The notes below the pieces were generated by a model that had not been told where the DNA came from, ran no database searches, and saw only the letters and a program-made list of their open reading frames with translations. DNA of 64,000 nt from Mytilus californianus (Eukaryota): positions 24,304,001 to 24,368,000 of the forward strand of contig NW_026262626.1 in NCBI RefSeq assembly GCF_021869535.1, written 5' to 3'. Every line of letters starts with the position of its first letter. The first letter of the stretch is position 1. Shown one piece after another: positions 18,576 through 63,211 of the stretch. A program made the position numbers and the translations under genes.

Positions 18576-18724
18576 TTATAAATAGAATACCACTTGACAT
18601 GAACTAACATATTTACGTTCATTCCCGTTTGAACGTAAAACAATCGTGTTTAGGAAAAATACAGACATGAGTAATAACACAACTAAAACACTATAGCATA
18701 CAACTTAAATGTTGTGACACCTAC

Positions 18725-42588: not shown

Positions 42589-42624
42589 ATGAATGTCATA
42601 TTTATCTTCCTTGTTTTCGTTCAG
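42589..42624 (+). CDS. Membrane-receptor gene exon 1: signal peptide
   Basis: MNVIFIFLVFVQ|GTATGA, phase 0, continuing as VLSLNG in the next exon; acceptor tttttag| at 42562. Confidence 0.75.
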
Positions 42625-43179
42625 GTATGAATACTTAAGATTTGATCCTTAAATTTGAGTTTGTGTTTTCCAATTCTAAATCTCAATATTTCGAAATATT
42701 TGGACCTTACAGAATTGTTTGGTACTTAAAGATATTATGTTTCTTTTTCGATTTGTACATTGCATTCGCTTATTCTATGAGTTTTCAGCTTTCTCAATTC
42801 AAAATGAGGTCTAGGTCAAAATTTCACAGATGCCAAATGCAGGTTTATGCTAGAAGAAAAAATGACCTCATAGCTCGTGTAGTTACAATTTAGTACTTAA
42901 AATTTGTGTAATTATAAGATGTTTAACAACAAAAAAGGGATCTGCTCTCATAAACGATATATAAATAATTTCATAGTACCATGGGGAAGATTTATCAGGT
43001 ACAGATTTCAAACATATGCATGTTTCTAAACATCAGAAAAATTACATTTTTTAGATATTCCTAATTTGAATGGGCAATTGCTTACATGTAAAATTATTTT
43101 AACATTACGCTGTGTTCTTACAAATACTATATATACTACACACTGGTGCAGTAAAATTGGTACCGTTAATGTTATAACT

Positions 43180-43450
43180 ATTACTTGGATCGATATATCG
43201 AGTATCGCTGAAGAGAACTATATGTCATATGTCGCAATGCACATCTGGTGCAGTAAAATGGTATCGTTGATGTTAATACTACCAATTGATCCATAAGTTT
43301 GTTGATGTTAATACTACTTAAAGATCGATACGTTTGATGATGCTTATAATACCAAAAGATCGATACGTTTGTTGATGTTAATACTACCAAAAGATCGATA
43401 CGTTTGTTGATGTTAATAGTACCAAATGATCGACACCTTTGTTGATGTAT
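43180..43450. repeat. 35-bp minisatellite (GATCGATACGTTTGTTGATGTTAATACTACCAAAA)
   Basis: GATCG recurs at 43323, 43358, 43393 and 43428. Confidence 0.85.
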
Positions 43451-43685
43451 TGTTTGTCCCCAAAGGGAATAAACAGTCCTTTGGTACAGCCATGAATATA
43501 CGAAATTGGGTTGTGTTTTTAATTTTTATGTTATAAAGTTATCTGAATCAATTCAAATTATAGAATAAATCTCCCTCACACTTCTTGTTCCGTCTCTCGA
43601 TTTTGCTCTACATTATATCGGCATTAGGTTTCATCATTATAATCTAGATTAAACTATTAATATATTTTAATTTATTTTTTTATAG

Positions 43686-43857
43686 GTATTGTCCTTGAAT
43701 GGAGCATTCGAATTCTCTTGTCCAACGAAGGCACACTGGTGGTTCCGGGCCAAATCGATGTGCAAGTCTCCAAGTTCCTATATATGCTTATATGACGTGA
43801 CTTTTCGAGTAAATGTATACAAAGATAAATGTTATAGACCTAGAATTCTAGCTCCTG
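43686..43857 (+). CDS. Membrane-receptor exon 2: Cys-rich ectodomain, part 1
   Basis: tatag|VLSLNGAFEFSCPTKAHWWFRAKSMCKSPSSYICLYDVTFRVNVYKDKCYRPRILAP(G)|GTATGT; phase 0-1; 4 Cys. Confidence 0.85.
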
Positions 43858-44224
43858 GTATGTCATTTAAAACTTATCTATATTTGAACATTGTTAAACT
43901 TTCAGTAGAAACCTTTATATTCAGTGTTTTTCATCTACAACGGACTCGTTTCTTTCACCCCTCTTTTGAAACACTCTATAAAGAATAGTTAACAAATACA
44001 ATCTTCTGTTTTCAGATAACAGCATTCTTATCAAAGATTAAAGAAAATAGTTTTTGGTTCAAAATATAGCAGTCATTCGTTACTATTACGCGTATTCATT
44101 ATCTCTGGGATAAGTTAAATTTAATATACCCGATTTTTATAATGACAGATAAATTCAAATGATATTTTCCAATTTTCAATCATAGAGTCATGTATACTGA
44201 TCACTAATTAAGTATTATTTGTAG

Positions 44225-44530
44225 GATATAAATACGTTTATCAGCCAAACTTGAATAGGGCATCATGCAATGTTACTCGATATCAGCCTTTTATTTTTGA
44301 TACGATTGGGAGCAGCGATTGCACGTTTCTGAAATCTGTTTGCAACAGTGAAGGCCAATCGACGTATGACAACGGCACCACAAAATCCGACAGAACATGC
44401 AAGTGTAATACCGATAGAGGATATACATATGTGAAGGAGCCTAAAAACCATAACTACTGTAATCCCTCAAATGAAGATTGCTCTTGTCATATGGGCACTA
44501 ATCCAAAGAAAAACACAATTGGCTCGATAG
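44225..44530 (+). CDS. Membrane-receptor exon 3: TNFR-like Cys-rich ectodomain
   Basis: tgtag|(G)YKYVYQPNLNRASCNVTRYQPF...SDC..KSVCNSEGQ..DNGT..SDRTCKC...YCNPSNEDCSC...GSI|GTAAAA; phase 1-1; 8 Cys; N-glycosylation sequons NVT and NGT. Confidence 0.88.
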
Positions 44531-45490
44531 GTAAAATAAAACGTTTGTTTTCGAAATTTATTAATTTCAAAAGTGTAAAATACTGCAAAGCAATAGAAAT
44601 CTCAATTATGGAAGGTAAACAGGATATTTTGGATTGTTTCCATATGTGGCAATGATGGGGCTTCTTTCTTAGATTTTAACTTATTTTCAAAATATTACCA
44701 TGTGCATATTTCATTTTAAAAATTTTTTTAATCGATACATTGCAATATTTAAAAAAAGGTATATTACACGTTCACTTCATAGAAAAACGTCAAAGATATC
44801 ATTGGCCAAGACTTGCTTCCTTTCATTTTTACAAAAGCCTTTCCGTGACTTGTGTGGAGCTATGAATTTCATTTGAGAAAAGAATGAGAAAATATGCATT
44901 TTGGCATAGTTTTTTTCATGTTGACCATGTGTTTAATTCTGTTTATTCAACGAGATGATATTGCTATTTTCATGAAATCTTAAATATAATCAATCGTGCA
45001 AAGATAACTCATTAATAAACATAATTTGGTAAATAAAGTGTTCGATAGTTTATCGGTGTCTTTTTGATAATCAATTCTGAATAATTCACAGCGTATGATT
45101 ATGTTGATTGTATTTATCCAATTGAACTTTAAGTAACGAGTTCTTATCTAAAAACAATTACGACTGCCTCATACCATGAAATAAAAAAATACATCTTATG
45201 AAGGGGTTTTGTTGATATTTCAATTTTACCATCAAAGAGATAAATACACTCTTCCCGTTTTGAAGTTTCAACAATTATTAAGCAAAATCGATAATAAAAA
45301 TCATATGGAGCTTTTAATATCTTTTAAGTGATTCGACATTCTAGATCTGGCATTTTTGTCAGTATTGCCCTAATAGAGGGTTTCTGTTTACAAGCTAGCT
45401 ACCAAAAGGTAGATCTGAAATTACCCTTAAGATAATTTCTGCGATTTTGTAAAGATGACTTTGTTGACGTAACGAAATTCTTTTTCGCAG

Positions 45491-45545
45491 ATTTTAAATA
45501 CTATGAAGAAATAAACATAACACCAAGCCAGTCACGTGGAAATAC
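45491..45545 (+). CDS. Membrane-receptor exon 4 (stalk)
   Basis: ttcgcag|(D)FKYYEEINITPSQSRGN(T)|GTAAGT; phase 1-2, fits both neighbours. Confidence 0.7.
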
Positions 45546-47068
45546 GTAAGTTCAATTTTATTCAATCCTTAAATCATATCAATTTTCAGGTGTCGTCTAT
45601 TTATGCTTATTCAATATTCGATATGTCTACTTCAGTTCACAAGTTAGACTACATGGCATTTCAAAAACATAGAAATACATACATGTCGTCATTATGCTCA
45701 AATGAACAAGTCCTTCTGTATCATTGGTATTCATATTTTATAAGTAAACCTATCTATAATAGTTATAGGGTGGTCGGAATTAAGGATTACTGGTTATAAA
45801 CAGTCAAAAATAGTTAAAATATTAGCGTTCTTCTTGATTATCTTTCCTTCCACTTTGAATAACCACCATATGGAAAATGTAATACGAAGTATTGAATAAA
45901 ATAACTTCCATCATGTATAGACATTGTCTTTTAAGAACACTATATCAACATATGATCTACAAGGTTGCCATAACATGACCGGCAATTTGAGTCCTCGATG
46001 CTCTTCAACTTTGTACTTTATTTGGCTTTTAAATTTTTTTTTTGATTCGAACGTCACGTCACGACACTGATGAGTCATTTGAAGACGAAATGTATGTCTG
46101 GCGTGCAAAATTTCAATCTTGGTATCTATGATGAGTTTATTTCACTACAAAATACTGAAACAAAACAAACGATAAACACCCTCGAAGTATATCGAGTAAA
46201 ATAGTGTCTACAAATTGCAAGTAATTCGGTAGGTATGCATAGCAATTTAGACAAACAAACTAGCCGAAAGAGAAAAATGAAGAAGTATGTTTACTTTTTG
46301 TTCTAATATTGTAATTTACATATTTGACATACTGGGGAAAGTCGAACGCTTACAAATACATGAAATTAGATAACCTCTGCTAGATTCGTCACGTGTTTAT
46401 CCCAAACCAGAAGCCTGTTATACAGTTGTTGTCATTGGTTCGTGTCTGTCAAATTTTTTTCTCGTTAAATGTAATGTTATAAATCTATATAAAAGAAGAA
46501 TGTGGTATGATTGTCTTTGGGACAACTCTCAACAATAGACCAAATGATACAGAAATTTAAAACTATAGGCCACCGTAGGCCTTCTACAAAGAGCAACAAC
46601 GAACGTTTGTATGCCATGTCGGGGTACTCTGTGACTGCCTTTACGTATAAGGTAGGCATTGATTATGCTCATTGTAAAAGGCCGTATGGAGAACAAAAGT
46701 TGTTTATATATATGTCATTTTAAATTAATTAGATATTACATGTGGCAACTATACCACATCACCTCTTATAAGTGCCATCTTAAAGTAATACATCATAACT
46801 GTGAAAATGTATAAGTAGCTGAAGCCTATATATGTAAACATATAATAATAATATCAGTCCGCAATTCACGAGAGTGAAAAAATACCCAGTGCGCTTGAGT
46901 TTAAGAATTTGAGAGTTTGAGACACCAAAGTCCGAAATAGATAATCTGCCGCCCTCTATTAATCGAAGTTTGAGTGGACGTAAATAAAAAATATATAGAA
47001 CTTAAAGTCAAGTTTCTTATTTTTTTTCAACAAATTTAGCAAGTAACCTTATTAATATGTCTTTTTAG

Positions 47069-47139
47069 GTTTAATATGTCCAAAGAAATAAAGATTTTTG
47101 ACTTCGACAATTACAAATACAATATAGCTTGTCCTACAC
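47069..47139 (+). CDS. Membrane-receptor exon 5 (stalk)
   Basis: tttttag|G FNMSKEIKIFDFDNYKYNIACPT C|GTAAGT; phase 2-1; the only open frame is the phase-compatible one. Confidence 0.7.
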
Positions 47140-47369
47140 GTAAGTTTAAACTTGATAAGGCAAACAAGCATATATAGTGGTGCAAAAAATATAAGCAGTA
47201 TTAAAGCAGGATAAATACTGATAAGATCTTATATGGGTGTAAAGTGTACTTTGAGAATACAAATCACTTTTGGTTAGTCTACAAACATGACAAACATATA
47301 AACAAAGTCATATACGACTTTTTCCATTAATTTTCGATTTCTCAAATTTTCAAAAAACTTACATGTGTA

Positions 47370-48070
47370 TAACAATTTCGATACTGTCAGGCCATTACAG
47401 ATGGCATTTTGTGGAATTAACATTAATGCGCCCATAGGGTCTACGCATTGGAAATAAACACATTTTTTCTACAACAAATTGTGGACATGATACGGGTTAT
47501 GTTCTTTTCGTAAATTTTGTAATGGTACGATATTAAACCCATAGCGGGAGGGATTGTGCTTGATTTTCAAACGATGAATACATAACCTTTCATTAAGGTT
47601 AATTGAGGTCTGGAGCTGGCATGTCAGTAACTGCTAATTGTCCTTTATTAACTTATGTTGATCATTATCAATTTGCCTAGGTTTTTCTTTTACCTATTTT
47701 AACATCGGACTCTAACTTCTTTTAAACTGAGTTTTACTGTGCGTATTGCTGTTTATTTGTTTATTCTACATTGGCTAGAAGTATATGCGGAGGGTTGAGA
47801 TTTCATAAAACATGTTTAATCTCGCCACATGTTGGCGACTTTCAGTAACATCTGGCCTTTGTTAGTCTTGTGTGTTTTCTTTTAATTTTGGTTTATTTAT
47901 ATGTTTCGTGTGTTCATTTTCCCTGAACTAGTACACATTTTTTTCGGGAGTCAGCTGACGCCCGCCTGCGGTTGTAGAATGTTCTTTCTGTGTTGGTGGC
48001 CTAGGGCTGTTTTCTGCTCTTTGGTTGGGTTGTTGTCATATTGATACATTCCCCGATTTCATTCTCAATT
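47370..48070 (+). repeat. Family A copy, diverged
   Basis: Colinear with 5190-5910 (GAGGTCTGGAGCTGGCATGTCAGTAACTGCTA etc.). Confidence 0.7.
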
Positions 48071-48794
48071 AGATGCTTTGCTAGATTTTGAAATTCAGTA
48101 ATCATGTTATAAATTTTATCGAAGTCCATTTATTGATAGCATGGAAAGGTTGACATGAATTCAAGAATTATGATAGATTTTTCAAAGAATGTAACAGTTT
48201 CAGCTATTCTGAAATATTTCCTTACATAGCCGTAGATGATTTGGATGGTCGTATGACTTTGCTGAGCCATGCCATAGAATGTTAAACAAACCTGATTTTT
48301 TTAAGTATTTTTCTAGAATCAATCTAATATCATATAATGCAAATTAATGAATTTTTACATCTATTTTCAATCTTACGAAAAATAAACCGAAACACCAATA
48401 TACAACACTACAATAATTGATCACTCTGCTTGAAAATGTTGGTGGTCCTAAACATATTTTTTTTTCAGTTTATATGAAATAACTTATCAACTACTTATAG
48501 TTAGCAGCAATTATGCAAAATGGTTTTGGAAGAACATATCTTGCTTAATATTTCGATCTGCGGAAAATTTTAACGGTAAAAAAGGATATATTTCTATCAT
48601 TTATTAGGAATGTTTTTTGATTTGTTAATTTCTGCCGTTAGTGTTGATTCATTGGTTATTATTGACAATATCGTCTTATACAACTGATTTTGATGCATTC
48701 TGGTAACTTTATATGCGCCAGATGAAGTGTGAAATACTATCTTTAGAACCCCTTCAGGTTGCTAATAAATCGGTAAGATGGCTGTATCATTTGC

Positions 48795-49145
48795 CATATT
48801 TGAATACATGCATATTTGAATATTTGAAAACATACATATTTGAATATTTGAACACATTCTTATTTGAATATTTGAACACATACATATTTGATTGACTAAT
48901 TGAAAACATACATATTTGATTGACTAATTGAAAACATACATATATACATATTTGAATACATACACATATACATATATTTGAATACATACATATATTCATG
49001 TATTTGAATACATGCATATTTGAATATTTGAAAACATACATATTTGAATATTTGAACACATTCTTATTTGAATATTTGAACACATAAATATTTGATTGAA
49101 TAATACATATTTGAATACATACATATCTACATATTTGAATACAAA
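48795..49145. repeat. ATATTTGAATAC-type minisatellite with a higher-order duplication
   Basis: Short units; block ~48797-48890 is repeated at ~49003-49095. Confidence 0.85.
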
Positions 49146-49245
49146 TATGGTGTGCACTAAACTATGTAAAATATATCAATTATAACATTGAATCTTTAAA
49201 AGTAGACCAATGCACTCAATTTCTATGTATTTTGTATTATTGCAG

Positions 49246-49302
49246 AACAATATCGTACCAAAGCAATCGTATGTGTTTTAATATCAGTTGCATTGTCCCT
49301 CG
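49246..49302 (+). CDS. Membrane-receptor exon 6: start of transmembrane helix
   Basis: ttgcag|(Q)QYRTKAIVCVLISVALSL G|GTAAGT; phase 1-1. Confidence 0.75.
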
Positions 49303-52119
49303 GTAAGTTAATTGAAATAAATATATATCAATTATGATTTTGAATCACTTATACGTTTTTTCTTTCACCTAAAAGAAAAGTTTCATCGAATGATCTCAAC
49401 GTAACGTATATTTTCAATTCAACCCTAAAATTTGATTCAGATAAATTTTTAAATACAGTGTAAGTGTAAACCGATCTGTTAGATTGATTGATCTATAACA
49501 AAATATGTGTATTATCGGTGGAAAAAACACCTCACTAAAATAAATATTTTTTTCTTTAACAATGAACTCAAGGTTCCATAAAAACTGTAATATTTCTGTT
49601 CTTGCAGTGTATTGTTTATTGTATGCCTTTATATTGTTATTTTTATTAAAAAAGTACTACATTCTTAACCATTTCAACATCATATGAATTTTTCTCAACA
49701 TATGTATTTTTCTCAACATATGAATAACATTCTTTATGCATTATTCACAGTCGAAACCTAATTACCATGGTCTTTACCAAATATAGAAATATTACGATCA
49801 TCCTTTTGATTCGAATTCAAGAATTGAATGACAATTTAATTGTTGTTTTAATTCTGTAAATTATGATTATATAGCATAAGCTAGTATATAAACAAATAAG
49901 GAACATAAATGTCAATCTTACCCGGTTGTGAATCTTTAGCTCTTCATGTAATGAAATTATTATACATTCTTGGCTTTTAAAAATTCCAGTTTGAGCTTTC
50001 CCGATAGAGGTAAATACAGAAAAGCGCTTCGGATGCATGAAATTTATAACTTGTTGTTTTAATTTTTTTAGCCGTTAAAATCCAATTCTTTCTTTTATTG
50101 TTTAAGCTTTTAACCTTCTGATATAATGTGTTTTGATTTTTAAGCTTCATTTCTTGATGAATGTAATGAATAAAAAACCATGTTTTTTTTTCTGTCTCGT
50201 TTCCTCATTCCAGTAAACTAAATATCTACATTTGTCTATATCAATTATAATATTAAATCTTTTTATCACTTACATATGAATAAGAAGATGTGGCACGAAT
50301 GCCAATGAGACAATTATCCATCCAAGTCACAATATATAAAAAGTAAGCAATTATTGATCAAAGTATGGCCTTCAACACAGAGCCATGACTCACAAAGAAC
50401 AGCCAGCTATAAAGGGCCACAAAAGAACTAATGTGAACAATTCAAACAGGAAAAACCAACAGTCTAACCTATATAAAAACGAGAAACACGTATGAACCAC
50501 ACCAAAAAAAAAAAAACGACAACCACTGAACAACAGGCTCCTAATCTATTTTATGTTTATGATCTTTAACTATGTTTATCACTCATAGTCTAAACTATGA
50601 TTATTATCTAATCATTGATAACATCCTGCTTATAACCTATTCCAATTGCATATCCGCATAACTCTCATGTTCATATAATAAATCATATCGTCTGTCCCTT
50701 TGCCTTTATCATCCTGTTGTGTTGCTCAAAACTTTTCGTATCAAGACTTTCAGAAGTGAGCTCAACGTATCAGCGATGTCGTATCGTTTGAGGAGGCCTT
50801 ATCAACAACGTCACAGTGTGTTGGATAGCACGATAAACAGAGAATCGGTAGATACATGTTTTGAAAAATATCAGCCGCTCGACATAATATGACGCTTTTT
50901 TGTTCGTTCGTTGTGCCCAGTTTAAAAAGTTTCATTTTGTGCTTGTGGCTGATATTTAACGATATCAATGTGTAGAACACCTGATAACATGTATAACATT
51001 TAAATTTTACACACATATATTGTATTACAAAAACACAATAAAGATATGAACCAATATTTTATAAGCAATTTTTTTTATCAATTGCTTTTTAAATTAATTG
51101 AAAAAAAAAATAATAGTTTTTTGGGTTGCTTTTATTTCCATATGTAGCAATCTAATGTTAAATACCACGTTAACATGTTTAATAAAAGATTTTATTTTCC
51201 AGTCGGTGTTGTTGGAACTTATATTCTAGAGAGAAATATACGACAACATTTTCCAATCCATAGTAAGTGCATAATATATTGATACTCTTATTAGTATATT
51301 TCTTTTAATGGTTTAAAGTCATACTTTTCGGGGGTTTTCTGGATCATGAATGACTATACGCTAGTCTTTTGTCATAGTGTTCATCATGTAATATACCTTA
51401 ACATATAACTAGTGCAAAGATATCCAGCAATTCTCTTTATGAAAAGCTATCCTGCAATTCATTATACTGCAAATGCGTTCGAAAAACTACTTGAGCGACA
51501 CTTTTATTTTTTTTTCAAAATCATGTTTTTTGACGTTTTTGGTTCAAAAAAAAATTTCTATAGAAAATCAAAATCGTGTTGAGGATTTCAATAAATTGCA
51601 ATATATTTAATCCCAGACATTATTCATATTTCCGTCTATTCATTCCAGATTTGCGAGTTTCCTACTCATATTAACAACTGAAAAATGTAAAATTTTGGTT
51701 TAAATTAATTTTCACGTGCAATACAGACTAATTAGCTTTAGAACCCTTTTTGCAAATGTTTTACTTTTCTTTTGCCTTACTTTGATAACAAAAAATGCAC
51801 CCATCATCTAATGAAAATAAAGCGAAAGCCACTGATACAAACAGGGCGTATTACAATCATACAACTTTGTTTTACAAAACATTTGTTAAAATATAGATAA
51901 CAGCATTTACTCACTTAACATAGACATATTGTAATTTTAAGAAACTACTTCAAAGAATGCTGAGAGTATGGAAAGTCATTTCACAGTATGATTGGGACAA
52001 TTATTTCTAGTGAAAAATAATGTTAGAAACTACTACATAAGATATAATTTGGATTTCAGGCGTAAACATTACTAAGGTTCGAACAATGGAATCTTTGAAA
52101 ATATAAGATGAGTCTGCTG

Positions 52120-53620
52120 TTTTCGGCCTTTAGAATGCATATCCCAGAAATTCTTTGCTATCACGTTGTAAAACTATCCAATAGCTATTCATTAAAGTAG
52201 TCTATTATCCCTAGCCATTAAGAACTCCCGGGACAACGAGTTAGAAAGTGGGTACACCCAATATGTATTTTATAGAATTTTGGCCTTTTTTAATGTTTCG
52301 GACGCATTTCTACACCTTTAAGAATGCTTACCCTAGAAATTCTTTACAATCCTATTTAAAAACTACTTTCCAACAGCTGTTCATTAAGAAAGAGTCTTTA
52401 TTTACCTAGCCATAAAGAAATTCCGAGACAATGAGTTTGAAAATGGGTACACCCCATGCATCTTTTATAGAATTTTGGCTTTTTCTGTGTTTCGGACGAT
52501 TTTTTTCGGCCTTTAAGAATGTTTACCACAGACATTCTTTGGTATCCCGTTGTAGGACTATGCTAATGGACTTTCATTAAAGCAGATTCTATAATCCCTA
52601 GAAATAAATGACACCGGGGACAATGATGTTGAAAGTGGGTACACTCAATGCGTATTTTATAGAATTACGACGGGTGCCACATGTGGAGCAGGATCTGCTT
52701 ACCCTTCCGGAGCACCTGAGATAACCCCTCTAGTTTTTGGTAGGGTTCGTGTTGCTTAGTCTTTAGTTTTCTATGTTGTGTCATCTGTGCTATTGTTTGT
52801 CTGTTTGTCTTTTTGTTTTTGGCAATGGCGTTGTCAGTTTGTTTTCGATCTATGAGTTTGACTGGTATCTTTCGTCTCTCTTGTATGGCTTTTTCAATGT
52901 TTCGAACGAAATTTTTACCCCTTTAAGAATGCTTAACCCGGAAATTCTTTACTATCCCAATTTAGTAAAATTCAACAGCTATTCATTAAAGCAGAGTCTA
53001 TAATCCTTAGCCATAAAGAACTGCCGAGAAAAGTAGTTGGAGAGTACGTATTTCATGGAATTTTGACTTTTTTTCTATGATCCGGACGAAATTTTTCGGC
53101 CTTTAAGAATTAGTGCCCGAGAAATTTTTTGCTATCCCGTTGCAGTACTATCCAAGAGCTATTGATCAAAGCAGGGTTTATAACAAATAGTCATACAGAA
53201 CTCCCTAGACAATGAGTTGGAAAGCTGATACACCCAACGCGTATTTTATGGAATTTTGGCTTTTTTACTATGTTTTGAACGAAAAATTTTGGCTTTTGGC
53301 TTTTAAAAATGCTTACCACAGAAACTCTTTGCTATCTTGTTGTAGAACTATCCAATAGCTATTCATTTTACGCAAATTCTTAATCCCTAGCCAGAAAGAA
53401 CTCCCGCGACAAGCAGTTTGAATGTTCGTAATTTATGGAATTTAGGCTTTTTTTAATGTTTCGGACGAAATTTTTCGGCCTTTAAGAATACTTACACCTG
53501 AAATTCTATGCTCTCCCATTTTAGTACCATTCAAAAGCTATTCATTAAAGCAGAGTCCCTAGCCATGCATAAAAGAACGGCAAAGTTAACGAGTTGGAAA
53601 TTGGGTACCTCTAATTCGTT
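52120..53620. repeat. ~185-190-bp satellite-like tandem array (7-8 diverged units) with a family-B insertion at ~52666-52880
   Basis: TTTCGGCCTTTAAGAATGCTTACC..GAAATTCTTTGCTATCCC motif near 52121, 52312, 52503, 52913, 53093, 53293 and 53471. Confidence 0.85.
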
Positions 53621-54785
53621 TTTTAAAGAATTTTGTATTTTGAAATTTTACAGACATTTTAAATGTATGAAATTGTCTTCTGTCAGTTTCATTAGAATGG
53701 AGATAACGCGTCGCCAGTAAACTTAATTAGCGACCATCAAATCAGCATTTGGTGCCGTCGGCGCTTAAAATACAATACATTTATCTCATAATTGCATTTC
53801 TTGGTAATAAACGCAAAACGGAATAGAATAATTCAGTTGGCCGCTAAACGCACTGTAACACTCGTTCAAAAGACGTCAAAGTACGATGACAGAATTAATT
53901 ATTGCTAACCTCTAGTTGTTTTTCCTTACTTTTATTCTATGGTTGTTGTTGTAATTACATTTACCTCAGCAGTTCTTAATTTATGAGAAAAATATATCAT
54001 ATGATGATTCAATTGATTTCATACTTTTATCATGTTTTATTGAACTTTCAAAAAAACAGTTGACGGATTTGTGTGAAATTGTTATAACATTTCAACTAAA
54101 TTTGATATTTACTACTTGGTAACTTTTATTTCCATTTCTATTTTTCGACGACAGCTTCCCCATGATGACTAAACTGTAATTCGGTTAAATCATATAAAAG
54201 CAATTAGATAATTCAAAACGGTTCCTTATTCTTTCAAGGCTCTTGACACATGTGGCTTGTATGTTATTTATAAATCATTTGTTTACAAAACTTTGAATTG
54301 TTCGAAATACTAAGGATGTTCTATACTAGAAATAGATAAAACGGAAATATAACCTGTTTTTTGACAAAACCTTTCGAATTGTTGATACCTGAAGGCTATT
54401 ACGTTTATACATGTTTTGGCCTTTCAACCTTTAAGACTTAGCGTCCCGAACGACTCTTTTCATTTGTAGGCAAATGTTCGATTTGCGTTCATCATAATAC
54501 GCCTGATATCTTTGATAAATATTTTTGGCGCTCGATTTTCTACCACCAAATTACATTTAGTTTGGTTGCTTTCATTCTGCAGAGTTATTCGAATTCATAT
54601 TTATGAATACAATGTGTCATATCAATAAAGTTACGGTTAGAATAAAAAAATGTTTATTACTATCTCTTTTCGGTGTTACATTTTTGTACATTGAGATAGT
54701 CCTAGAGTGAAATTGACATGAAATTAATTTTGAAGTACGTTATTTGTATATCATGTATATTGTAATTATCTTGTTTTAATTGTAG

Positions 54786-54851
54786 AAAACCCGAAGACAG
54801 ATATAGACATACAAACACAAGATGACCAGCTAATTCCAAATGATATTCGAG
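54786..54851 (+). CDS. Candidate cytoplasmic linker exon of the membrane receptor
   Basis: ttgtag|xNPKTDIDIQTQDDQLIPNDIR G|GTAC; phase 1-1. Its end resembles HIPDHIR G|GT of exon 13443-13698. Confidence 0.5.
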
Positions 54852-55394: not shown

Positions 55395-56040
55395 GCATAC
55401 AGGTCCGTGTATATGTGCGTCCATTAGTTTTTTCATTTTGAAATATCAAAAACATCGTTTTTGATTTCTCAAAAATCAAAATGAAAATCAAAAGTCTTTC
55501 CGTTTTTCGTTTTTGATTTCACTAATAATGAATTTTGAATGTAATTTTAATTATTCTCGTTTTATAATTTACAATGTTTTCCATTCTTGTTTCACAGTCA
55601 TTGATAGTAAATAATGTCAATGTAAACACATCGGTGTTCTTTCAACATATTGTAAATATAATAGACCGCCTGACTTATGAATTGAACTACGGTGATAAAT
55701 GAATCAAAGCCTTTCAAATTACCTTGTTTATATCTTTACTAAAAAAAATATTATATTTAAATATTAAACGAATTATAAATTTAAATTGTACAATATAATA
55801 TTATAAAAAGATGGTACAAATAGATAGATTGGTTACAACATCACATTAACAAGGGAGGTTACTTCTTTTAAAACTGATAAGAAAACTAGCCCAGTCGTTA
55901 AAGTATACATGCACAGCGGTTATCAGATCTATAGTATTTAAATCGCAGTTAATGTCGACGGATGCAAAAGTCTTTATCAATCTGAACAATAAGGGTGCGT
56001 GATCTTTACTTTTAAGTTTAGAAAGGTTGATCTAAGATGA
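55395..56040. mobile_element. Truncated inverted copy of the TTAA element at 62280-63211
   Basis: Reverse complement of ~62474-63205 over ~650 bp, with few differences. Confidence 0.85.
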
Positions 56041-56564
56041 TAAGACAGGGCCGTAACTAGCCTCTATTACAAGTGAAGCAAAATATATTTTGGACGAGGG
56101 GTCTAGGGCTCAAGGCCCCCAAAAGATCTGGAAAAAATGACGCAAAATCGTGCATTCTGAACGTTTCTTTTGGACCCTTTCTTAATCTAAAACGCAAGTT
56201 TTGTTTTATATATTTTTTCGACAATATATCAAAATATATAGATTCAGTGTAAGACTTTTAGTATTTAGGGACAACACCAAAAGAAATATGTAGGATAAAG
56301 CAAAACATTGTAATCCACATAGTCAGGTGTCAGGCTGTTGTTTTTAGGGTATGAATGGTTCGTTGCCTCGTTGAAGACTCTCCGGCTACTTTCAAGATGA
56401 AGAACTGGAATAAAAGCCCTGTTCATTGATAATTTTCATTTTTTCTATGTATTGTGTGCGATGTTGTCCCATGCACATTTACTCCACATCTCTATTTTCT
56501 ATTTAGGGCCTAAACAAGGCTCAATGCAAGTTTAGCCCTTCAATGTTAAATTCTAAGGTCATAT

Positions 56565-56920
56565 GTAACACTATTGTTTCGGGTAAGGGTGAATTTGGTA
56601 CCTATTAAAACGTTTAAACCCGCTGCATTTGTTTGCACCTGTCCTAAGTCGGGAACCTGATGTTCAGTAGTTGTCGTTTGTTGATGTGGTTCATAAGTGT
56701 TCTCGTTTCTCGTTTAGTATATAGATTAGACCGTTGGTTTTCCCGTTTGAATGGTTTTGCACTGGTCATTTTAGGGCCCTTCGTAGTTTGCTGTTCGGTG
56801 TGAGCCAAGGCTTCCTGTTGAAGACCGTACTTTGACCTTGAATGGTTTTTCTTTTACAAATTGTGACTTGGATGGAGAGTTGTCTCGTTGGCACTCATAC
56901 TACATCTTCTTATATCTATA
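56565..56920 (+). repeat. Family C copy
   Basis: Colinear with 17490-17845. Confidence 0.8.
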
Positions 56921-56933
56921 TATGGTCTTTTTA

Positions 56934-57581
56934 GGTAGCACTCCACAGTTAGGTGTGTAGTTTCGCATTTTGGCCCCTGTGAATTTTTCAAATATGAGAG
57001 CTATTGTGCAATAAAATTCATTTTTGGATAGCTGAAGATTACTATAGCCTTCGTAGTGGGTTTATAGGAACATCTAGTTTGTGTAATGCATGTATTATGG
57101 GTTGTTTTCTGTATGAGTATTTTCATATCCATAATGCCCGGCAATTATTGCAGTTTTTTTTTTTAACTTTTTGTCGCACGAACTTTGTGATTAAATTTTA
57201 CGAAAAAAATGAGGCGAAAGACACCCAATTTTTATTTGATCATTTGTTAGATTAATGGCAACAGTTTCAGAAAAGGTATTACTCATAGACATTTTAATTC
57301 TAGTTTAAACCAAATTTAGGGGAATATGTGACATTTTCATGCCCCTTTTTGCAATATTTTACGATAAATAAATGCAGAATGTTGCCATGAATACACAAAA
57401 AAGGAATTATTTTTCACCATTTTAGCTCTGAAAATCAAATTTATGGAAGATACTGATTACATACATATGCACATGTATGACACAAACAGTTGGCTTAATG
57501 TATTAGAAAGCCAGGAATAGGAGATGATTAAACATTTTGTGGTTCAATTTTAATTTTATTTTCTAACTGTGGAGTGCTACC
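56934..57581. mobile_element. MITE with perfect 19-bp TIRs, TTAA-type flanks (Kolobok-like)
   Basis: TTTA|GGTAGCACTCCACAGTTAG ... CTAACTGTGGAGTGCTACC|TTAA. Confidence 0.8.
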
Positions 57582-58109
57582 TTAAATAAATTGATGTCGG
57601 GAGATTGGGATTTCTAGCTTTAGTTTAACCCATGTCCGCTTTTTATTTGTATTTACAGAAAAGAGAGCCAGTTTTGTATTCTTTAATATACTGTAACAGT
57701 TTAAATTTCCATGAAAAAGGGACAGTTTTTTCTATGTCCGGTAGCATCGTATCATATCTAGACATCGGTAGGCATATAAAATTGCAAAACCACACATGAC
57801 CGTTCATTATTCTTCGTAAATTCATTCCAAGTCTTATTAAGTCTACGCAAAGCAGAAAATGAACTTTTACAACAAGGAATATTACACAACTGAAGCCTTA
57901 GTCATAAAGATCGATTGACTGATTGGTGTTCCTTTAACGTCGCCTCAGAACAAAAAAATATTATCTGATATTCATTCTCAACATCTGCAATCTCTATTGT
58001 TCCCAAGGAAGCAATCATTTGATTCTCTGGGGGTGGGGCAGGGATTTGTATCCTAAGTTAATACTTTTTTTTTTAACCCAGACCATAAAACATGCCTTTA
58101 TCCACGGCC

Positions 58110-58612
58110 ACTCTCAAACACAGCTAGATATCATTGAGATGGGAGCCATCTCTGTGGGCCCCGCTGTGAATAATGTGCATTAAAAAGTTTTTATCTTTAC
58201 CATAGGACATGGGGTTGTCAACTGAAACCAATGTTTTTGATCTTGACCTTTGACCTAGGAAGTTGTACATAAATTATGACACACCCTCTGGTGTTGGTTT
58301 ATATACATGTCAAGTATAAACTTTGAAATCGTAACGGTTTTCAAGATATAGAGCGGACACGATCTTTACCATAGGACATGGGGTTCTCAACTGAAACCCA
58401 GGTGTTTGACCTTGACCTTTGACCTAGGAATTTGTACATACATTATGACACACCCTCTGGTGTTGGTTAGTATACTTGTCAAGTATAAACTTTGAAATCG
58501 TAACGGTTCTCTAGATGTAGAGTGTACACAATTTGTTACGGACGGACGAACAGACAGACGGACGGACGGACTGATCACTATAGGGCGCCGCCATTCGGCG
58601 GGGCCCTAATAA
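58110..58612 (+). mobile_element. Non-autonomous Helentron-like (HINE-type) element with two 169-bp internal repeats
   Basis: Units start at 58193 and 58362 and contain GACCTTGACCTTTGACC; then a (GACG)n microsatellite and terminal hairpin TAGGGCGCCGCC-ATTC-GGCGGGGCCCTA. The left boundary is approximate. Confidence 0.7.
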
Positions 58613-59084
58613 TATTTTCAACATTTGTTAAAAACATTTTTTTTTACACTTTTATATTTTTTGTTGTCTTAAAATATTAATTTGACTTGAATTTATACGA
58701 GTTTACTAAATATACATGTTTATAACAAGCCAAATCAGTTTATATCTTGTTTCTCGCCTGACTATACAAAAGCCCAGTAGAGCTTTGGTCATCATTTGTC
58801 GTCTTTTATAAATAAGGTTGACTTATAAGCTGTCTATACAAAGTAATGGGACAATGGCATGAAGACATCACCAAATCACCATATGCAATACACAAAAAGA
58901 CACCTAGAGCTCACAATAGGTCGTCAACTTCCCATCAACAGGCAGTAAGCTCTGGTTGGCTCGAAACACAAATCCAAGGGTACAACAAAATGTGAAAATA
59001 TCCAATTAAAACTGGGTGACCTGGGAGGACAACATTGGAACTTTCCTAAGAAATACAAATTTCAACCACCTCAACATTTTATAA

Positions 59085-59330
59085 TAAGGAGATGTGGTAT
59101 AATTGCCAATGTGACAACTATCCCCAAAGTTCAAATGAAGTGGATGTAAGCAGTTATATATACAATGTAGGCAACCGTACCGCCTTCAACAATGAAAAAA
59201 AAACCATACAGTATAGTCAGGTATAATAGGCCCTCACATGAAAAATATGAAAAAGTTCAATTGAGAAAAATAACGGCCTAATTTATAACAAAATAAAACA
59301 AAAAACAAATATGACGGACATCAAAAAATG
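59085..59330. repeat. Dispersed repeat family F (GGAGATGTGGTAT.ATTGCCAATG.GACAACT)
   Basis: Same head at ~15625, ~23735 and ~46495. Confidence 0.55.
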
Positions 59331-59904
59331 ATGAAGTTGAAGTCCAATCAACTTGAAACTCAGTACACATGTTTCATATGATATGTTCTTTCTAATTTTG
59401 ATGCCAAGTTAAAGTTCTGACCGCAAATTCACGGTTCACTGGACATAGAAAATGATAGTGCGAGTGGGGCATTCATATACTATGGACACATTCTTGTTCA
59501 AATCCTTTATTAAAGAAGTTAGTAATTTTATTTCTGATAAAAATACTTAATTAGACGAACCAATCTAATTACAAGATATATCTTTGATTTCGTTATACTT
59601 ATATGTATGAGCACATTAATATATGTATAAATTTTAATAAGATTACTGGACAAACGTGTTTAATCTTTGGATTTAATTGTTAACAATTTTTCCGAGCGGA
59701 GCGAGGCGAAAAACATTGACGTCTTTCAAGCCAAATTTTATATGTTCGCTATACACACAAATTTATTTTTTAAACTTGGTAATTAATTAATCTAAAATAC
59801 AGTCCTAGATAATCAAATAATCATGAAATATTTGGTCTAGTAATCAAATAATCACACAAAAAAACCAGCCAAGTAATCACATAATCAAAACCTCCATGAG
59901 GAGG

Positions 59905-60590
59905 CTCATTAAAGATGACATATTTTGGTATTAATATTGATTCACTTATATGGTTTTTGCATCGGTAATAACCACATTAATTCTAAAACCGGTTGTTGGC
60001 ATTATACGAGTCATTTTCTTCTCATATATTTTATGACGGTATGATACTAAACCCCTCACAGGAGGGGTTGTGCTTGATTTTCATGTGATGAAGACATAAT
60101 CTTTCAATCGGTTTAATTGAGGTCTGGAGCTGGCATGTCAGTTACTGCTAGTAATCCTTTGTTAAGTTATAAATCATTGTCATTTTGCTTAGTTTATTTT
60201 GTTACCTATTGTGACATCGGACTCGGACTTCTTTTAAACTGAGTTTTACTGTGGGTATTGCTGTGTGTTTATTTACTCTACATTGGCTAGCTATAGTGGT
60301 ATAGGGGAGGGTTGAGATCTCACAAAACATGTTTAACCCAGCCGCACTTTTGCGCCTGTCCCAAGTCAGGAGCCTCTGGCCTTTGTTAGTCTTGTATGTT
60401 TTTTTTTAATTTTTAGTTTAGTGTGACGTCCATTTTTACTGAACTAGTATACATTTTTATTTAGGGGCCAGCTGAAGCCCGCCTCTGGTTGCAGGATTTT
60501 CCCGTTGTGTTGAAGACCCCTCGGCTGTTTTCTGTTCTTTGGTTGGGTTGTAGTCTCTTTGCCACATTCTTTATTTCCATTCTCAGTCTT
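59905..60590 (+). repeat. Family A copy
   Basis: Colinear with 5205-5910. Confidence 0.8.
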
Positions 60591-62027
60591 AATTTCACCA
60601 ATGAAACTTTACATTATTTTTTGCCTTTGTATTAAATAAATTTGTAATCTTCTTGGAACTCAATTACCGTCTGATTACAATTAGACACGCAAGAATGTGA
60701 AATATGAAAACTTATTTGGCCTTCAATGCCTCAACTTTTTTCAATGTGAGTAACTTCATTGTTCAGTAAGATTTCGATTTTGACAATTATTTTGCAAACT
60801 ACCATAGATTTCCGGTAATTATTCTGCATAAAACCCCATGGGAAAGCACATTGGCATTATTTGCTAAACGTTTATTGGAACCCAATAATCTGGCAAGGTG
60901 TTGCAACCTGTAATGTGAAGACGTGAATGAAAATGCTGAGTTTGTAAGACCAGGCTAAAGCAAGCAGCCACTCGCTAGCAGCCACTTCACTAGCAGCCAG
61001 TTTTCAGATATTTATATAAACCCAAATGTTGCATAAGATTCAAACGTTCTTCAGATGTTTTTATTAATATATAACCACTATATTATCATTTTTCAATATA
61101 TAATTAAGCAGTCAAAGACATTATTTAATAAATTTTAAAATTTCATTTCTTGTTTATTAATTATATAAATGCAATAGAAATCGCTTTCAATATATCACAC
61201 AGCGTGCTGCACGCTTTACATTTTAAATAGTCAAAACCTTTGAGTGTATATAGAATCGTTAATAATTATGAAATTATTTTAAATGTTGGCAAAATTGCAC
61301 TATTGTGTGAAACAGCTTTCCATATTCTCGGCATCCTGTCAAATAGTTCATGAAAAGTAATTATTGTTCTGCATTAGAAGAAAATAAAGTTTCACTCGTG
61401 CTTTAACTTTTTTTTTGCCACACAAAACTGTTTTGACAAAACATTCTACTTCTGAACCAGTGAATTTCGCTTACTTAGGATTGGACGAAAGGTTTCTTTT
61501 TGGACTTAAAGTATGGTGGACAAGGAAATTGTTTATTAGTTTTAAATAAAATAATCCGTGCTATACCTTAACTAGGAATTTTGATCAAGTAGGCGCTAGA
61601 TCTTTAGCTTACGTTTGCACCTAGTGCGGACAAGAGTATTGCCGTAGAATGTTTTTTATTATCTTTTCGGGAAGGGTTGGGTAGGGTATCCGACCTCAAC
61701 TTTGGACCTACTTTAGAAAAAAAAACTAAGCCGAACAACACCATGGATTTTGTCTACTGTAAACCTCATCTACCCAGCTTCGCTTTGCACCTAGTGCGGA
61801 CAAAAGTATTGCCGTAGAAATTTATTTATCAACTTTTCGGTAATGGTGTGGTAGGGTGGGTAGCTGAGGTCTACTTGAGAAAAAATCCAGGGAGTTGTTC
61901 GGTTTAGTCATTTTTTATAATGTAAAGCTCACGTCTTAATTGATAGGCATAGAAATAAAAAGAATACGTATGATAACCAATAACAATCTACCGGAGACAA
62001 AATAACGTTGGTTTAGGCAACTAGTAC

Positions 62028-62272
62028 GATGGTCTGGATGCGGGGTTCTTCATTTCTGTATTCCATGTTATACCATTTTTCTCTATTCTTTACTTAGTGT
62101 TTTAGGCCATTTATCTCTATTCTTTATTTCTTTTTACTTTTTACCAATTATTTTGTTCTATTCAAATTTATACACCTCATTATTCTATTTTTTTATGTCT
62201 TGGTTCATTGTCTCTTTTATTTATATTTTTTGCCCACTATTCTCTATTCCGTAAACCCCCATCCACACCCTC
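62028..62272. mobile_element. Small MITE with ~19-bp imperfect TIRs
   Basis: GATGGTCTGGATGCGGGGTT versus AACCCCCATCCACACCCTC. Confidence 0.5.
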
Positions 62273-62279
62273 CAGTTAA

Positions 62280-63211
62280 GGTCACCATATAGCTTTCACA
62301 AATAAGCAAAACTACTACCGAATAGGCTCCGAATGGCAAAATGATTAAATGCTAATCCCGGTTTGAATTGTGAAATTGCGCAAATTTGTTTTTCAATCAA
62401 TTGATCAAGCAAAACACATTATCGTCCTGAATGTTCGTATAATACTGGCAGAAGGACCTTGGTCATCAATTCTAATTATCTTAGATCATCAACCTTTCTA
62501 AACTTAAAAGTAAAGATCACACACCCTTATTGTTCAGATTGATAAAGACTTTTGCATCCGTCGACATTAACTTCGATTTAAATATTATAGATCTGATAAC
62601 CGCTGTGCATGTATACTTTAACGACTGGGCTAGTCTTCTTATCAGTTTTAAAAGTAGTAACCTCCCTTGTTAATGTGATGTTGTAATCTATCTATCTATC
62701 TGTACCATCTTTATATAATATATTATATTGTACAATTTAAATTTATGATTCGTTTAATATTTAAATAGAGTAATTTTTTTTTAGTAAAGATATAAACAAG
62801 GTAATTTGAAAGGCTTTGATTCATTTATCACCGTAGTTCAATTCATAAGTCAGGCGGTCTATTTGATCTACATTATGTTGAAAGAACACCAGGGTGTTTA
62901 CATTGGCATTATTTACTATCAATGACTGTGAAACAAGAAAGGAAAACATTGAACATTATAAAACGAGAAATAATTAAAATTACATACAAAATTCATTATT
63001 AGTGAAATCAAAAACGAAAAACGGAAACACTTTTGATTTTCGTTTTGGTTTTATAGAAATCAAAAACAAAAAATGAAAACACTTTTGTTTTTCATTTTGG
63101 TTTTTGAGAAATCAAAAACGAAAAATGAAAACACTCTCGTTCTTTGTTTTTTATTTTTGATATTTCAAAATGAAAAACGAATGGACGCAAATATACACGG
63201 ACGCATACACC
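62280..63211. mobile_element. 932-bp element flanked by TTAA
   Basis: TTAA|GGT...ACC|TTAA with only very short terminal repeats; second copy at 55395-56040. Confidence 0.65.

What the first reader, a model, noticed from the sequence alone, without database searches (positions are those of the whole stretch)
42589..54851. Divergent TNFR-like type-I receptor that may plug into the same STAND module
Seen: six phase-consistent exons give signal peptide, Cys-rich glycosylated ectodomain, stalk and TM start. A further clean exon at 54786-54851 ends IPNDIR-G|GT in phase 1, mirroring IPDHIR-G|GT, the exon end immediately before the nSTAND3 exon in paralog 1. Inference: a STAND(-ANK) exon may lie beyond 64000. 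The locus would then hold two front ends (anchor plus HEPN; TNFR-like ectodomain plus TM) joined by phase-1 exon shuffling to one NTPase module, i.e. a cell-surface receptor with an NLR-like cytoplasmic tail. The link rests on one short motif.
Basis: partly seen in the sequence, partly recalled or inferred. Interest (0 to 1): 0.72.

Follow-up and report, generated by a model that had tools for sequence, protein, structure and literature searches.

The report
Mussel TNFR-like receptor gene with STAND-type linker
This is a real, weakly expressed California-mussel gene for a cell-surface receptor with a TNF-receptor-like outer part; its messenger RNA carries, after the membrane helix, the short linker exon that in related mussel genes always comes just before an NLR-like ATPase switch, but that switch, if present, lies beyond the window and was not seen.

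Summary
The plus-strand gene has at least eight coding exons. They encode a signal peptide, a Cys-rich ectodomain, a stalk, a membrane helix split over two exons, and then the 54786-54851 exon. It then runs 105 nt further onto sequence outside the stretch I could lay. The ectodomain belongs to a large Mytilus family (351 clusters). Its predicted fold matches only TNF-receptor ectodomains, weakly, and no sequence method places it in TNFR. Members of this family carry many cytoplasmic modules: Roc-COR, AIG1, HEPN, caspase and nSTAND3-ankyrin. The exon end (IPxxI-R/K/L, phase 1) is the same boundary that precedes the nSTAND3 exon in three other loci. No STAND sequence lies between 54852 and 64000, and 7.8 kb of that span is one transposon insertion. 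The STAND tail is therefore likely (about 0.6) but unproven. "Paralog 1" is on the opposite strand, so the two genes cannot share one module. RefSeq annotates only a truncated 189-aa product here. The scan noted the same receptor-STAND architecture before, on another piece of this genome. Verdict: a new member of a known kind.

The parts
42589..42624 (+). Exon 1: start codon and first 12 residues of the signal peptide (MNVIFIFLVFVQ); donor CAG|GTATGA, phase 0
   Evidence: Sequence. Homologues start with the same kind of 12-residue hydrophobic piece ending in Q (P0152, P0009, P0004). Not in the RefSeq model.
43686..43858 (+). Exon 2: end of the signal peptide and first Cys-rich module (4 Cys); ends in phase 1
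   Evidence: Sequence. tblastn hits by 62 fetched family proteins, 53-64% identity among the best. RefSeq P0169 starts at the internal Met at 43758.
44225..44529 (+). Exon 3: main Cys-rich module (8 Cys; N-glycosylation sequons NVT and NGT); phase 1 in and out
   Evidence: Sequence. A profile of this exon finds 351 representative clusters at E<=1e-3, 289 at E<=1e-10. 97% to P0169. Run X1 holds 87% of its sampled words.
45490..45545 (+). Exon 4: stalk (sequon NIT); phase 1 in, phase 2 out; donor AC|GTAAGT
   Evidence: Sequence. 100% to P0169 residues 136-154.
47069..47140 (+). Exon 5: stalk (sequon NMS, motif FDFDNYKYN); phase 2 in, phase 1 out; donor C|GTAAGT
   Evidence: Sequence. tblastn to P0005, P0009, P0152. 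RefSeq reads through this donor to the TAG at 47175.
49246..49302 (+). Exon 6: QQYRTK plus first half of the membrane helix (AIVCVLISVALSL); phase 1 in and out; donor G|GTAAGT
   Evidence: Sequence. Matches EYRTKAATWVLI of P0152. Laid by the spliced X1 contig, record letters 5-60.
51203..51262 (+). Exon 7 (new, not in the finding): second half of the membrane helix (VGVVGTYIL) and stop-transfer ERNIRQHFPIH; phase 1 in and out
   Evidence: Joints 49302>51203 and 51262>54786, both GT..AG, in X1 contig 1. Sequence and frame.
54786..54851 (+).
   Evidence: Sequence. Spliced in X1 contig 1, which runs 105 nt past the donor onto sequence not in 54852-55199. Same boundary in the window's minus-strand gene, L003 and L004.
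55403..63202 (.). 7.8-kb transposon-like insertion after exon 8: inverted arms 55403-56045 and 62471-63202, 8-bp target-site duplication GCATACAG / GCATACAC
   Evidence: the repeat finder and blastn; termini read. Only 551 + 798 = 1349 nt of non-inserted sequence remain between exon 8 and the window end.
13444..13461 (-). Comparator only: IPDHIR-G|GT, end of the linker exon of the minus-strand HEPN-STAND-ankyrin gene
   Evidence: An earlier follow-up in this scan calls that copy broken.

Best explanation
The locus encodes a type-I membrane receptor of a Mytilus-specific family. It has a signal peptide, two Cys-rich modules with a predicted TNF-receptor-like ladder fold, a glycosylated disordered stalk and one membrane helix. 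The short cytoplasmic linker ends at the exon boundary that, in related mussel genes, leads straight into the nSTAND3 NTPase exon, usually followed by ankyrin repeats. Shown: the exon structure, the family membership of the ectodomain, and the splicing of the membrane and linker exons into one RNA that continues past the linker's donor. Inferred: the next coding exon lies just beyond the window and is an nSTAND3(-ankyrin) exon. If so, the protein is a transmembrane NLR-like receptor. The proposed mechanism is by analogy with TNFR clustering and STAND/NLR switches and is untested: ligand binding outside clusters the receptor, and that drives nucleotide-dependent oligomerisation of the STAND domains under the membrane. 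The ectodomain sits in the Roc-COR/FN3 clade of the family, while the linker looks like that of the neighbouring HEPN-STAND-ankyrin genes. Such a tail would therefore have been grafted on independently by phase-1 exon shuffling.
For: Exons and phases. RefSeq P0169 confirms the E2-E5 junctions. The spliced RNA contig joins E6-E7-E8 with GT..AG joints and extends 105 nt further; the same run holds E3; run X1 has no depth over most of the introns, apart from repeat-derived pieces, so it behaves as RNA. Ectodomain family: 351 clusters. Fold: the top 50 Foldseek and top 24 VIA matches are all TNFRSF ectodomains. The ectodomain-TM-nSTAND3(-ANK) architecture exists: P0097 = XP_071124951.1 with 12 ankyrin hits, P0178 = LOC127714293 of M. 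californianus, and the 2307-nt Logan contig that encodes P0078. Boundary conservation: IPKDIL-G|gt followed by the nSTAND3 exon 1.65 kb later in L003; IPDHIR-G|gt followed by the STAND exon about 1.0 kb later in this window; the same arrangement in L004. The motif IP.[DNH]I[RKL] occurs in 8 of about 230 fetched proteins, and in 7 of them the P-loop follows directly in the printed sequence. Once the 7.8-kb transposon is discounted, only 1.35 kb of native sequence follows exon 8 inside the window, about the usual size of this intron. Tree: this ectodomain is sister to a 17-row Roc/FN3/short clade (SH-aLRT 99), and all STAND-fused ectodomains fall in the other half.
Against: No STAND or ankyrin similarity on either strand of 24000-64000. 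The identity of the 105 nt after exon 8 is unknown. The linker similarity is short: only I-P is invariant across 8 linkers, and identity to the first row is 19-33%. The closest ectodomain relatives carry Roc-COR, FN3 or nothing, not STAND. RefSeq annotates only a 189-aa product, and no gene is called over 47.2-57.2 kb. Expression is low: contig depth 2.6, and no reads on these exons in the raw RNA run X4. The word search with the window's STAND exon found no other 318-1011-aa protein on this scaffold. The neighbouring STAND gene is itself broken, so a downstream module could be decayed too.
Confidence: 0.6

Rival explanations
1. Short-tailed receptor. The mRNA continues from the linker exon into a small terminal exon or an untranslated exon, and the STAND module was lost or never present. 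The product would be a TNFR-like receptor or decoy of about 300 residues with a vestigial linker.
For: No STAND sequence in the 9.1 kb after exon 8. Many family members are short, ending after the membrane helix. Low expression. STAND-family copies in this genome are often broken.
Against: In every locus examined, the conserved phase-1 boundary leads into the nSTAND3 exon. 7.8 kb of the 9.1 kb is a transposon insertion, so absence inside the window says little. The contig stays spliced for at least 105 nt more.
Confidence: 0.22
2. The downstream module is of another kind used by this receptor family (Roc-COR, AIG1, HEPN, caspase), as in the closest ectodomain relatives.
For: The nearest ectodomain clade is fused to Roc-COR or FN3. 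The family swaps cytoplasmic modules freely.
Against: Roc-type relatives pass from the membrane exon straight to the Roc P-loop and have no IPxxIR linker. Among the fetched proteins the linker motif occurs only next to nSTAND3. No Roc-COR similarity in the window.
Confidence: 0.08
3. The RefSeq model is the main product: a 189-residue protein made by reading through the exon-5 donor to the TAG at 47175. With the upstream signal-peptide exon this would be a secreted, decoy-like ectodomain. The membrane form would be a minor isoform.
For: P0169 is the only annotated product of the locus.
Against: A spliced contig uses the exon-6 acceptor and the exon 6-8 junctions. All homologues splice exon 5 to a membrane exon. 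The RefSeq product starts at an internal Met and lacks a signal peptide, which is typical of an incomplete model. I could not lay reads on 47.1-47.3 kb, so this isoform is not excluded.
Confidence: 0.1

Closest known systems
Mytilus ectodomain-TM-nSTAND3(-ankyrin) receptors: XP_071124951.1 / XP_071124949.1 (M. edulis, 1255 / 1274 aa) and LOC127714293 (M. californianus, XP_052076312.1)
   Same: Homologous Cys-rich ectodomain (E 3e-20 and better to the exon-3 profile). Single membrane helix, and a linker exon ending IPxxI(K/L) in phase 1. nSTAND3 by Pfam for P0097 and for the L003 gene.
   Different: Their ectodomains lie in the other half of the family tree, about 31-35% identical to this clade. 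Their linker lacks the (K/T)DID element. For the present gene the STAND part has not been seen.
HEPN(DZIP3-type)-nSTAND3-ankyrin genes of mussels, including the minus-strand copy in this window
   Same: Linker end [RK][KT]DI[DE]...IP.HIR and a phase-1 boundary before the nSTAND3 exon. Exon 8 shares KTDID and IPxDIR with them.
   Different: They have a HEPN head and no ectodomain. In them the linker is the 3' end of a longer coiled-coil exon; here it is a free-standing 66-nt exon.
Crassostrea virginica receptor-like expansion described by Kaur, Iyer, Burroughs and Aravind 2021 (eLife 10:e70394, PMC8195603)
   Same: A Cys-rich extracellular domain and transmembrane helix, followed by variable immune or apoptotic modules including STAND NTPases, HEPN, AIG GTPases and ankyrins. 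This is nearly the same partner list as I find for the Mytilus family.
   Different: The oyster proteins have a constant DED + TRADD-N module after the membrane helix. No DED or TRADD-N was found by Pfam in the Mytilus proteins scanned, and the cytoplasmic part seen here (about 33 residues) has no room for one. Homology between the two ectodomains was not tested.
TNF receptor superfamily (CD40, HVEM, Fas, 4-1BB, TNFR1)
   Same: Predicted elongated disulfide-ladder fold. All top structural matches are TNFRSF ectodomains, and it is a type-I membrane protein.
   Different: No TNFR_c6 Pfam match and no profile match to any PDB sequence. Scores are weak (Foldseek E 2.5e-3 at best, Z 5.7 at best). 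No death domain or TRAF-binding tail is known.

Membership tests
Mytilus Cys-rich (YQPF...EDCSC) receptor ectodomain family (unnamed; no Pfam model) | Significant sequence similarity of the main Cys-rich module, with conserved Cys, YQPF and EDCSC positions | tested here: met
   The exon-3 profile finds 351 clusters at E<=1e-3. Invariant Cys, P, and D/S-C-S-C columns in a 69-row alignment. 55-61% identity to P0152, P0005 and P0009.
Mytilus Cys-rich receptor ectodomain family | Signal peptide, N-terminal 4-Cys module, stalk and a single membrane helix in the same exon order | tested here: met
   Exons 1-7 are collinear with P0152, P0005 and P0009.
TNF receptor superfamily | TNFR cysteine-rich domain detectable by sequence (Pfam TNFR_c6 or a profile match to solved TNFRs) | tested here: not met
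   No Pfam hit for the exons or for ten homologues. Profile A2 against 177,635 PDB sequences gave 0 hits at E<=10.
TNF receptor superfamily | CRD ladder fold | tested here: inconclusive
   AF2 model of paralogue P0152 (pLDDT 80-92 over residues 20-165). Foldseek top 50 all TNFRSF but E>=2.5e-3. VIA top 24 all TNFRSF but Z<=5.7, below the tool's own caution line of 8. The model is of a 61%-identical paralogue, not of this gene's product.
TNF receptor superfamily | Binding of a TNF-family trimeric ligand | not testable with these tools
   Needs binding assays.
STAND / NLR-like NTPase receptors (nSTAND3 clade, PF20720) | P-loop STAND NTPase domain in the same polypeptide | tested here: not met
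   No nSTAND3 or ankyrin similarity on the plus strand of 42-64 kb, or on either strand of 24-64 kb.
STAND / NLR-like NTPase receptors (nSTAND3 clade) | Conserved pre-nSTAND3 linker exon ending IPxxI(R/K/L) with a phase-1 donor | tested here: met
   The donor is used in RNA.
Oyster Cys-rich-TM-DED-TRADD-N receptor expansion (Kaur et al. 2021) | DED and NCOA6-type TRADD-N module after the membrane helix | tested here: not met
   The cytoplasmic sequence seen is about 33 residues of linker. Pfam finds no DED or TRADD_N in the scanned Mytilus relatives.

The most novel reading that the evidence does not exclude
This gene is an independent, fairly recent graft. The linker plus nSTAND3-ankyrin cassette of the neighbouring HEPN-STAND-ankyrin cluster would have been copied in inverted orientation behind a receptor of the Roc-COR/FN3 ectodomain clade. 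That would mean mussels have built transmembrane NLR-like receptors more than once by phase-1 cassette exchange, and that one extracellular sensor family is wired combinatorially to STAND, Roc-COR, AIG1, HEPN and caspase outputs.
Probability: 0.4. Interest if true: 0.6.

Novelty: new member of a known kind. Interest (0 to 1): 0.42.

Why it matters
NLR-type STAND switches are normally cytosolic sensors. Fusing one directly to a cell-surface ectodomain would be a one-protein route from outside recognition to an oligomerising death or immunity switch. Such fusions are already predicted in Mytilus RefSeq and described computationally for oysters, so this locus adds no new principle. It adds three things. 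First, RNA evidence that the receptor's membrane exons are spliced to a STAND-type linker exon that public annotation misses. Second, a case where ectodomain and linker come from different subfamilies, which points to repeated exon shuffling. Third, a tabulation showing that one TNFR-like head is paired with at least five kinds of immune output module in mussels. None of these proteins has been tested at the bench.

Tried and rejected
1. The 49608-49687 stretch (V-YCLLYAFILLFLLKK... ending at the TGA at 49685) as continuation of the membrane helix. It is phase-compatible with exon 6, but its only usable donor is phase 2 and does not fit exon 8. No run has any depth there, and the spliced contig skips it. 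It looks like a chance hydrophobic frame in 27% GC DNA.

2. Exon 8 as the remnant of a separate inverted HEPN-STAND gene. There is no HEPN, STAND or ankyrin similarity in 24-64 kb and no DNA similarity of the flanks to the minus-strand gene beyond transposon fragments. The spliced contig ties exon 8 to the receptor.

3. Reaching the sequence right of the window. The locus fetched through P0169 ends at window 57177 and shows no further called gene. A word search with the window's STAND exon found no other protein on the 42.6-Mb scaffold within its length range of 318-1011 aa. P0180 proved to be a genomic HEPN-STAND contig from another run. P0097 is not in the contig index. A short ORF near the window end is not a called gene. 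The scan's notebook has nothing to the right.

4. Pfam on the single exons gave nothing.

5. The word search with exon 3 alone returned only a 126-aa genomic read-through, because of the tool's length filter.

6. The joined (spliced) protein was never sent to any search or folding tool. Exons were searched one by one by reference, and the fold came from a stored paralogue (P0152). That joined step is left out on purpose.
Full report
WHAT THE WINDOW IS. The window is AT-rich (about 31% GC) and intron-rich. Earlier notes of this scan identify the genome as the California mussel, Mytilus californianus. That fits my own look-up: the RefSeq protein encoded here lies on record JAKFGE010000014.1 of GCA_021869535.1, and the window corresponds to about 24,304,001-24,368,000 of that record.

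CHECK OF THE OBSERVATION. Reading the plus strand gives six exons with canonical GT..AG sites and matching phases.
- E1 42589-42624: MNVIFIFLVFVQ.
- E2 43686-43858: rest of the signal peptide and a 4-Cys module.
- E3 44225-44529: an 8-Cys module with the motifs YQPF and EDCSC and two N-glycosylation sequons.
- E4 45490-45545 and E5 47069-47140: a stalk with two more sequons.
- E6 49246-49302: QQYRTK followed by a hydrophobic run.

Homology supports each exon. Dozens of fetched Mytilus proteins hit E2 and E3 by tblastn, and several hit E5. E1 and E6 are collinear with the signal peptide and pre-membrane segment of P0152, P0009 and P0005. RefSeq protein LOC127724933 (P0169, 189 aa) matches E4 and E5 at 100% and E3 at 97%, with exactly these junctions. 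However, it starts at an internal Met in E2 and reads through the E5 donor to a TAG at 47175. It is therefore a truncated model with no signal peptide and no membrane anchor.

The pattern IP[DN].IR occurs only twice in all six frames of the window. The other occurrence is IPDHIR at 13461-13444, but on the minus strand. The nSTAND3 exon (12370-10637) and the ankyrin frame (10694-9456) of "paralog 1" are also on the minus strand. The two genes are head-to-head and cannot share one physical NTPase exon.

RNA EVIDENCE. One run (X1, sample S1) holds 87% of the sampled words of E3. I laid X1, two sister runs and one raw RNA-seq run on 49200-55199. In X1 a 292-nt contig (depth 2.6, plus strand) lies on 49246-49301, 51202/3-51262 and 54786-54851. 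Both joints are GT..AG. Four letters precede 49246, and 105 letters follow 54851 that do not lie on 54852-55199. X1 has no depth over most of the introns apart from repeat-derived pieces, so it behaves as RNA.

Read in the frame set by E6, it gives V-GVVGTYIL-ERNIRQHFPIH. It therefore completes a 22-residue membrane helix (AIVCVLISVALSLVGVVGTYIL) and adds a basic stop-transfer segment, much like ...LIIVVGIERRWIKIR in P0152. E6, E7 and exon 8 are all phase 1 in and phase 1 out, and the frame stays open through the linker K-NPKTDIDIQTQDDQLIPNDIR-G.

The stretch 49608-49687 with the TGA near 49685 has no depth in any run, and the contig skips it. The raw RNA run X4 (about 6% of it read) has no reads on these exons, so expression is low or tissue-limited.

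WHAT THE ECTODOMAIN IS. Pfam finds nothing in the exons or in ten homologues' ectodomains. A profile of E3 against 1.84 billion representatives finds 351 clusters (289 at E<=1e-10). Every one whose source I looked up is a Mytilus protein or an unnamed Logan contig.

Instead I folded the stored paralogue P0152 (residues 1-223, 61% identical to this gene's product) with a 69-row family alignment. Residues 20-165 have pLDDT 80-92, and the stalk is disordered. By Foldseek against the PDB, the 50 best matches are all TNF-receptor-superfamily ectodomains (CD40, HVEM, Fas, DR5, DcR3, 4-1BB, OX40, TNFR1, RANK), but the best E-value is only 2.5e-3. By the Foldseek-independent VIA search, the best 24 are again all TNFRSF, at Z 3.5-5.7. 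The family profile finds no PDB sequence at all. "TNFR-like" is therefore fair as a description of the predicted fold. Membership in the TNFR superfamily is not established.

WHAT SUCH ECTODOMAINS ARE JOINED TO. Pfam scans of 30 long family members and phmmer with the window's STAND exon show the following partners:
- extracellular FN3 or Ig I-set arrays;
- cytoplasmic Roc-COR (P0009, P0023, P0047, P0052);
- AIG1 GTPase (P0073);
- DZIP3-type HEPN (P0050, P0051, P0098, P0101, P0121);
- caspase (P0090);
- nSTAND3 with or without ankyrins (P0097, P0049, P0088/P0178, P0096, P0078, P0091, P0100).

A few further combinations (kinesin, transposases) look like chimeric gene models. P0097 is RefSeq XP_071124951.1 of M. 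edulis: ectodomain, membrane helix, nSTAND3 and 12 ankyrin hits. P0178 is LOC127714293 of M. californianus. P0078 is encoded on a 2307-nt Logan contig whose length fits a spliced transcript.

The receptor-STAND architecture is therefore real in annotation and not new. Kaur et al. 2021 (PMC8195603) describe an oyster expansion with a Cys-rich extracellular domain, a membrane helix, DED plus TRADD-N, and variable STAND, HEPN, AIG and ankyrin modules.

DOES THE LINKER EXON PREDICT A STAND EXON? I mapped LOC127714293 onto its locus (L003). Its linker exon ends ATT CCA AAG GAT ATA CTA G|GT (IPKDIL, phase 1). After 1.65 kb, the next exon starts AT TTG CAG... (D-LQIKRKKEW...) and is the nSTAND3 exon. 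That gene also has a 9.2-kb intron elsewhere.

In the window's minus-strand gene, IPDHIR-G|GT is followed about 1.0 kb later by ...LRILKDWK...GGPGSGKT. L004, a genomic contig from another run, shows the same arrangement. Among about 230 fetched proteins, the motif IP.[DNH]I[RKL] occurs in eight, and in seven of them the P-loop follows directly in the printed sequence.

The similarity itself is short. In an alignment of eight linkers only I-P is invariant. Exon 8 shares the extra element KTDID with the HEPN-STAND type, but only if a two-residue shift is allowed.

WHERE THE STAND EXON COULD BE. tblastn with the window's own STAND and ankyrin frames, and with N-terminal STAND segments of eight relatives, finds nothing in 24000-64000 or in 54852-64000. 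The last 800 nt show nothing by eye either.

However, 55403-63202 is a single insertion. It has inverted arms 55403-56045 and 62471-63202 (93-94% identical) flanked by an 8-bp duplication, GCATACAG / GCATACAC. Without it, only 551 + 798 = 1349 nt of native sequence follow exon 8 inside the window. That is within the 1.0-1.65 kb seen for this intron in the other loci. A STAND exon just beyond 64000 is therefore plausible, but I could not read there.

ORIGIN. I built a quick maximum-likelihood tree of the 69 ectodomain rows of alignment A2. Rows were chosen as family members that have the N-terminal module and at least 40 residues after the domain. P0157, P0059, P0168, P0173 and P0176 were left out, and P0169 was added. 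The tree puts this gene as sister to a 17-row clade (SH-aLRT 99) of Roc-, FN3- or short-tailed receptors. All STAND-fused ectodomains fall in the other half. Together with the HEPN-STAND-like linker, this suggests that a STAND tail, if present, was acquired separately from the known receptor-STAND genes, probably from the adjacent cluster. The flanks share no DNA similarity with that cluster beyond transposon fragments, so any such event is not very recent.

MECHANISM, AND HOW SURE.
- Shown: a type-I topology by sequence logic (signal peptide, four sequons, a 22-residue helix followed by a basic segment); family membership; splicing through the linker.
- Inferred at about 0.6: the next exon is nSTAND3(-ankyrin).
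- By analogy only: ligand-driven clustering of a TNFR-like ectodomain would bring the STAND domains together for nucleotide-dependent oligomerisation. The ankyrin repeats would act as a scaffold or autoinhibitory part. No effector domain is known.
- Rivals: a short-tailed receptor (0.22), another output module (0.08), and the RefSeq read-through product as the main isoform (0.10).

VERDICT. This is a new, mis-annotated member of a known kind of mussel receptor gene.

Noticed in passing
window 55403-63202: A 7.8-kb element with about 640-nt inverted arms (55403-56045 / 62471-63202, 93-94% identical), an 8-bp target duplication (GCATACAG / GCATACAC) and no ORF of 90 aa or more inside. It looks like a decayed or non-autonomous DNA transposon; the 8-bp duplication would fit hAT-type. 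The right arm carries an expanded 52-nt tandem repeat (62999-63181).
   Followed up: partly
window 52667-52864: A roughly 200-nt repeat piece inside the exon 7-8 intron has depths in the thousands in all four runs and many loose ends on both sides. It is a highly transcribed, multi-copy element that also occurs at 18362-18579 and 8656-8759 of the window.
   Followed up: no
window 49200-49338 and 52838: Run X2 has a contig (depth about 26 at the joint) that runs past the exon-6 donor to 49338 and then jumps to 52838 (TT..AG, not a canonical intron). It may be an unspliced or repeat-chimeric contig. Unexplained.
   Followed up: no
proteins P0184-P0211 and others: About forty ENA and JGI metagenome proteins, several named 'ankyrin repeat protein', are 40-44% identical over nearly the whole mussel nSTAND3 exon and carry nSTAND3 plus ankyrin Pfam domains. 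Whether they come from animal DNA in metagenomes or from microbes was not checked.
   Followed up: no
P0050 (Logan contig of 3297 nt), P0051, P0098, P0101, P0121: The same TNFR-like ectodomain is also fused to a DZIP3-type HEPN domain, in some cases with an Ig domain. About 550 residues at the C-terminus of P0050 have no Pfam match.
   Followed up: partly
P0090, P0073: Family members with a caspase domain (Peptidase_C14) or an AIG1 GTPase behind the ectodomain. If the gene models are right, these are one-protein links from a surface receptor to a death protease or a GIMAP-type GTPase.
   Followed up: no
window 43758-47177 (RefSeq LOC127724933): The public gene model for this locus is truncated at both ends. 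It starts at an internal Met without the signal-peptide exon and ends by intron read-through. Exons at 42589, 49246, 51203 and 54786 are unannotated.
   Followed up: yes
window 12371-12424, minus strand: The minus-strand nSTAND3 exon has an in-frame stop (…DIVFCN*TRGYKEAY…) just after its start.
   Followed up: partly
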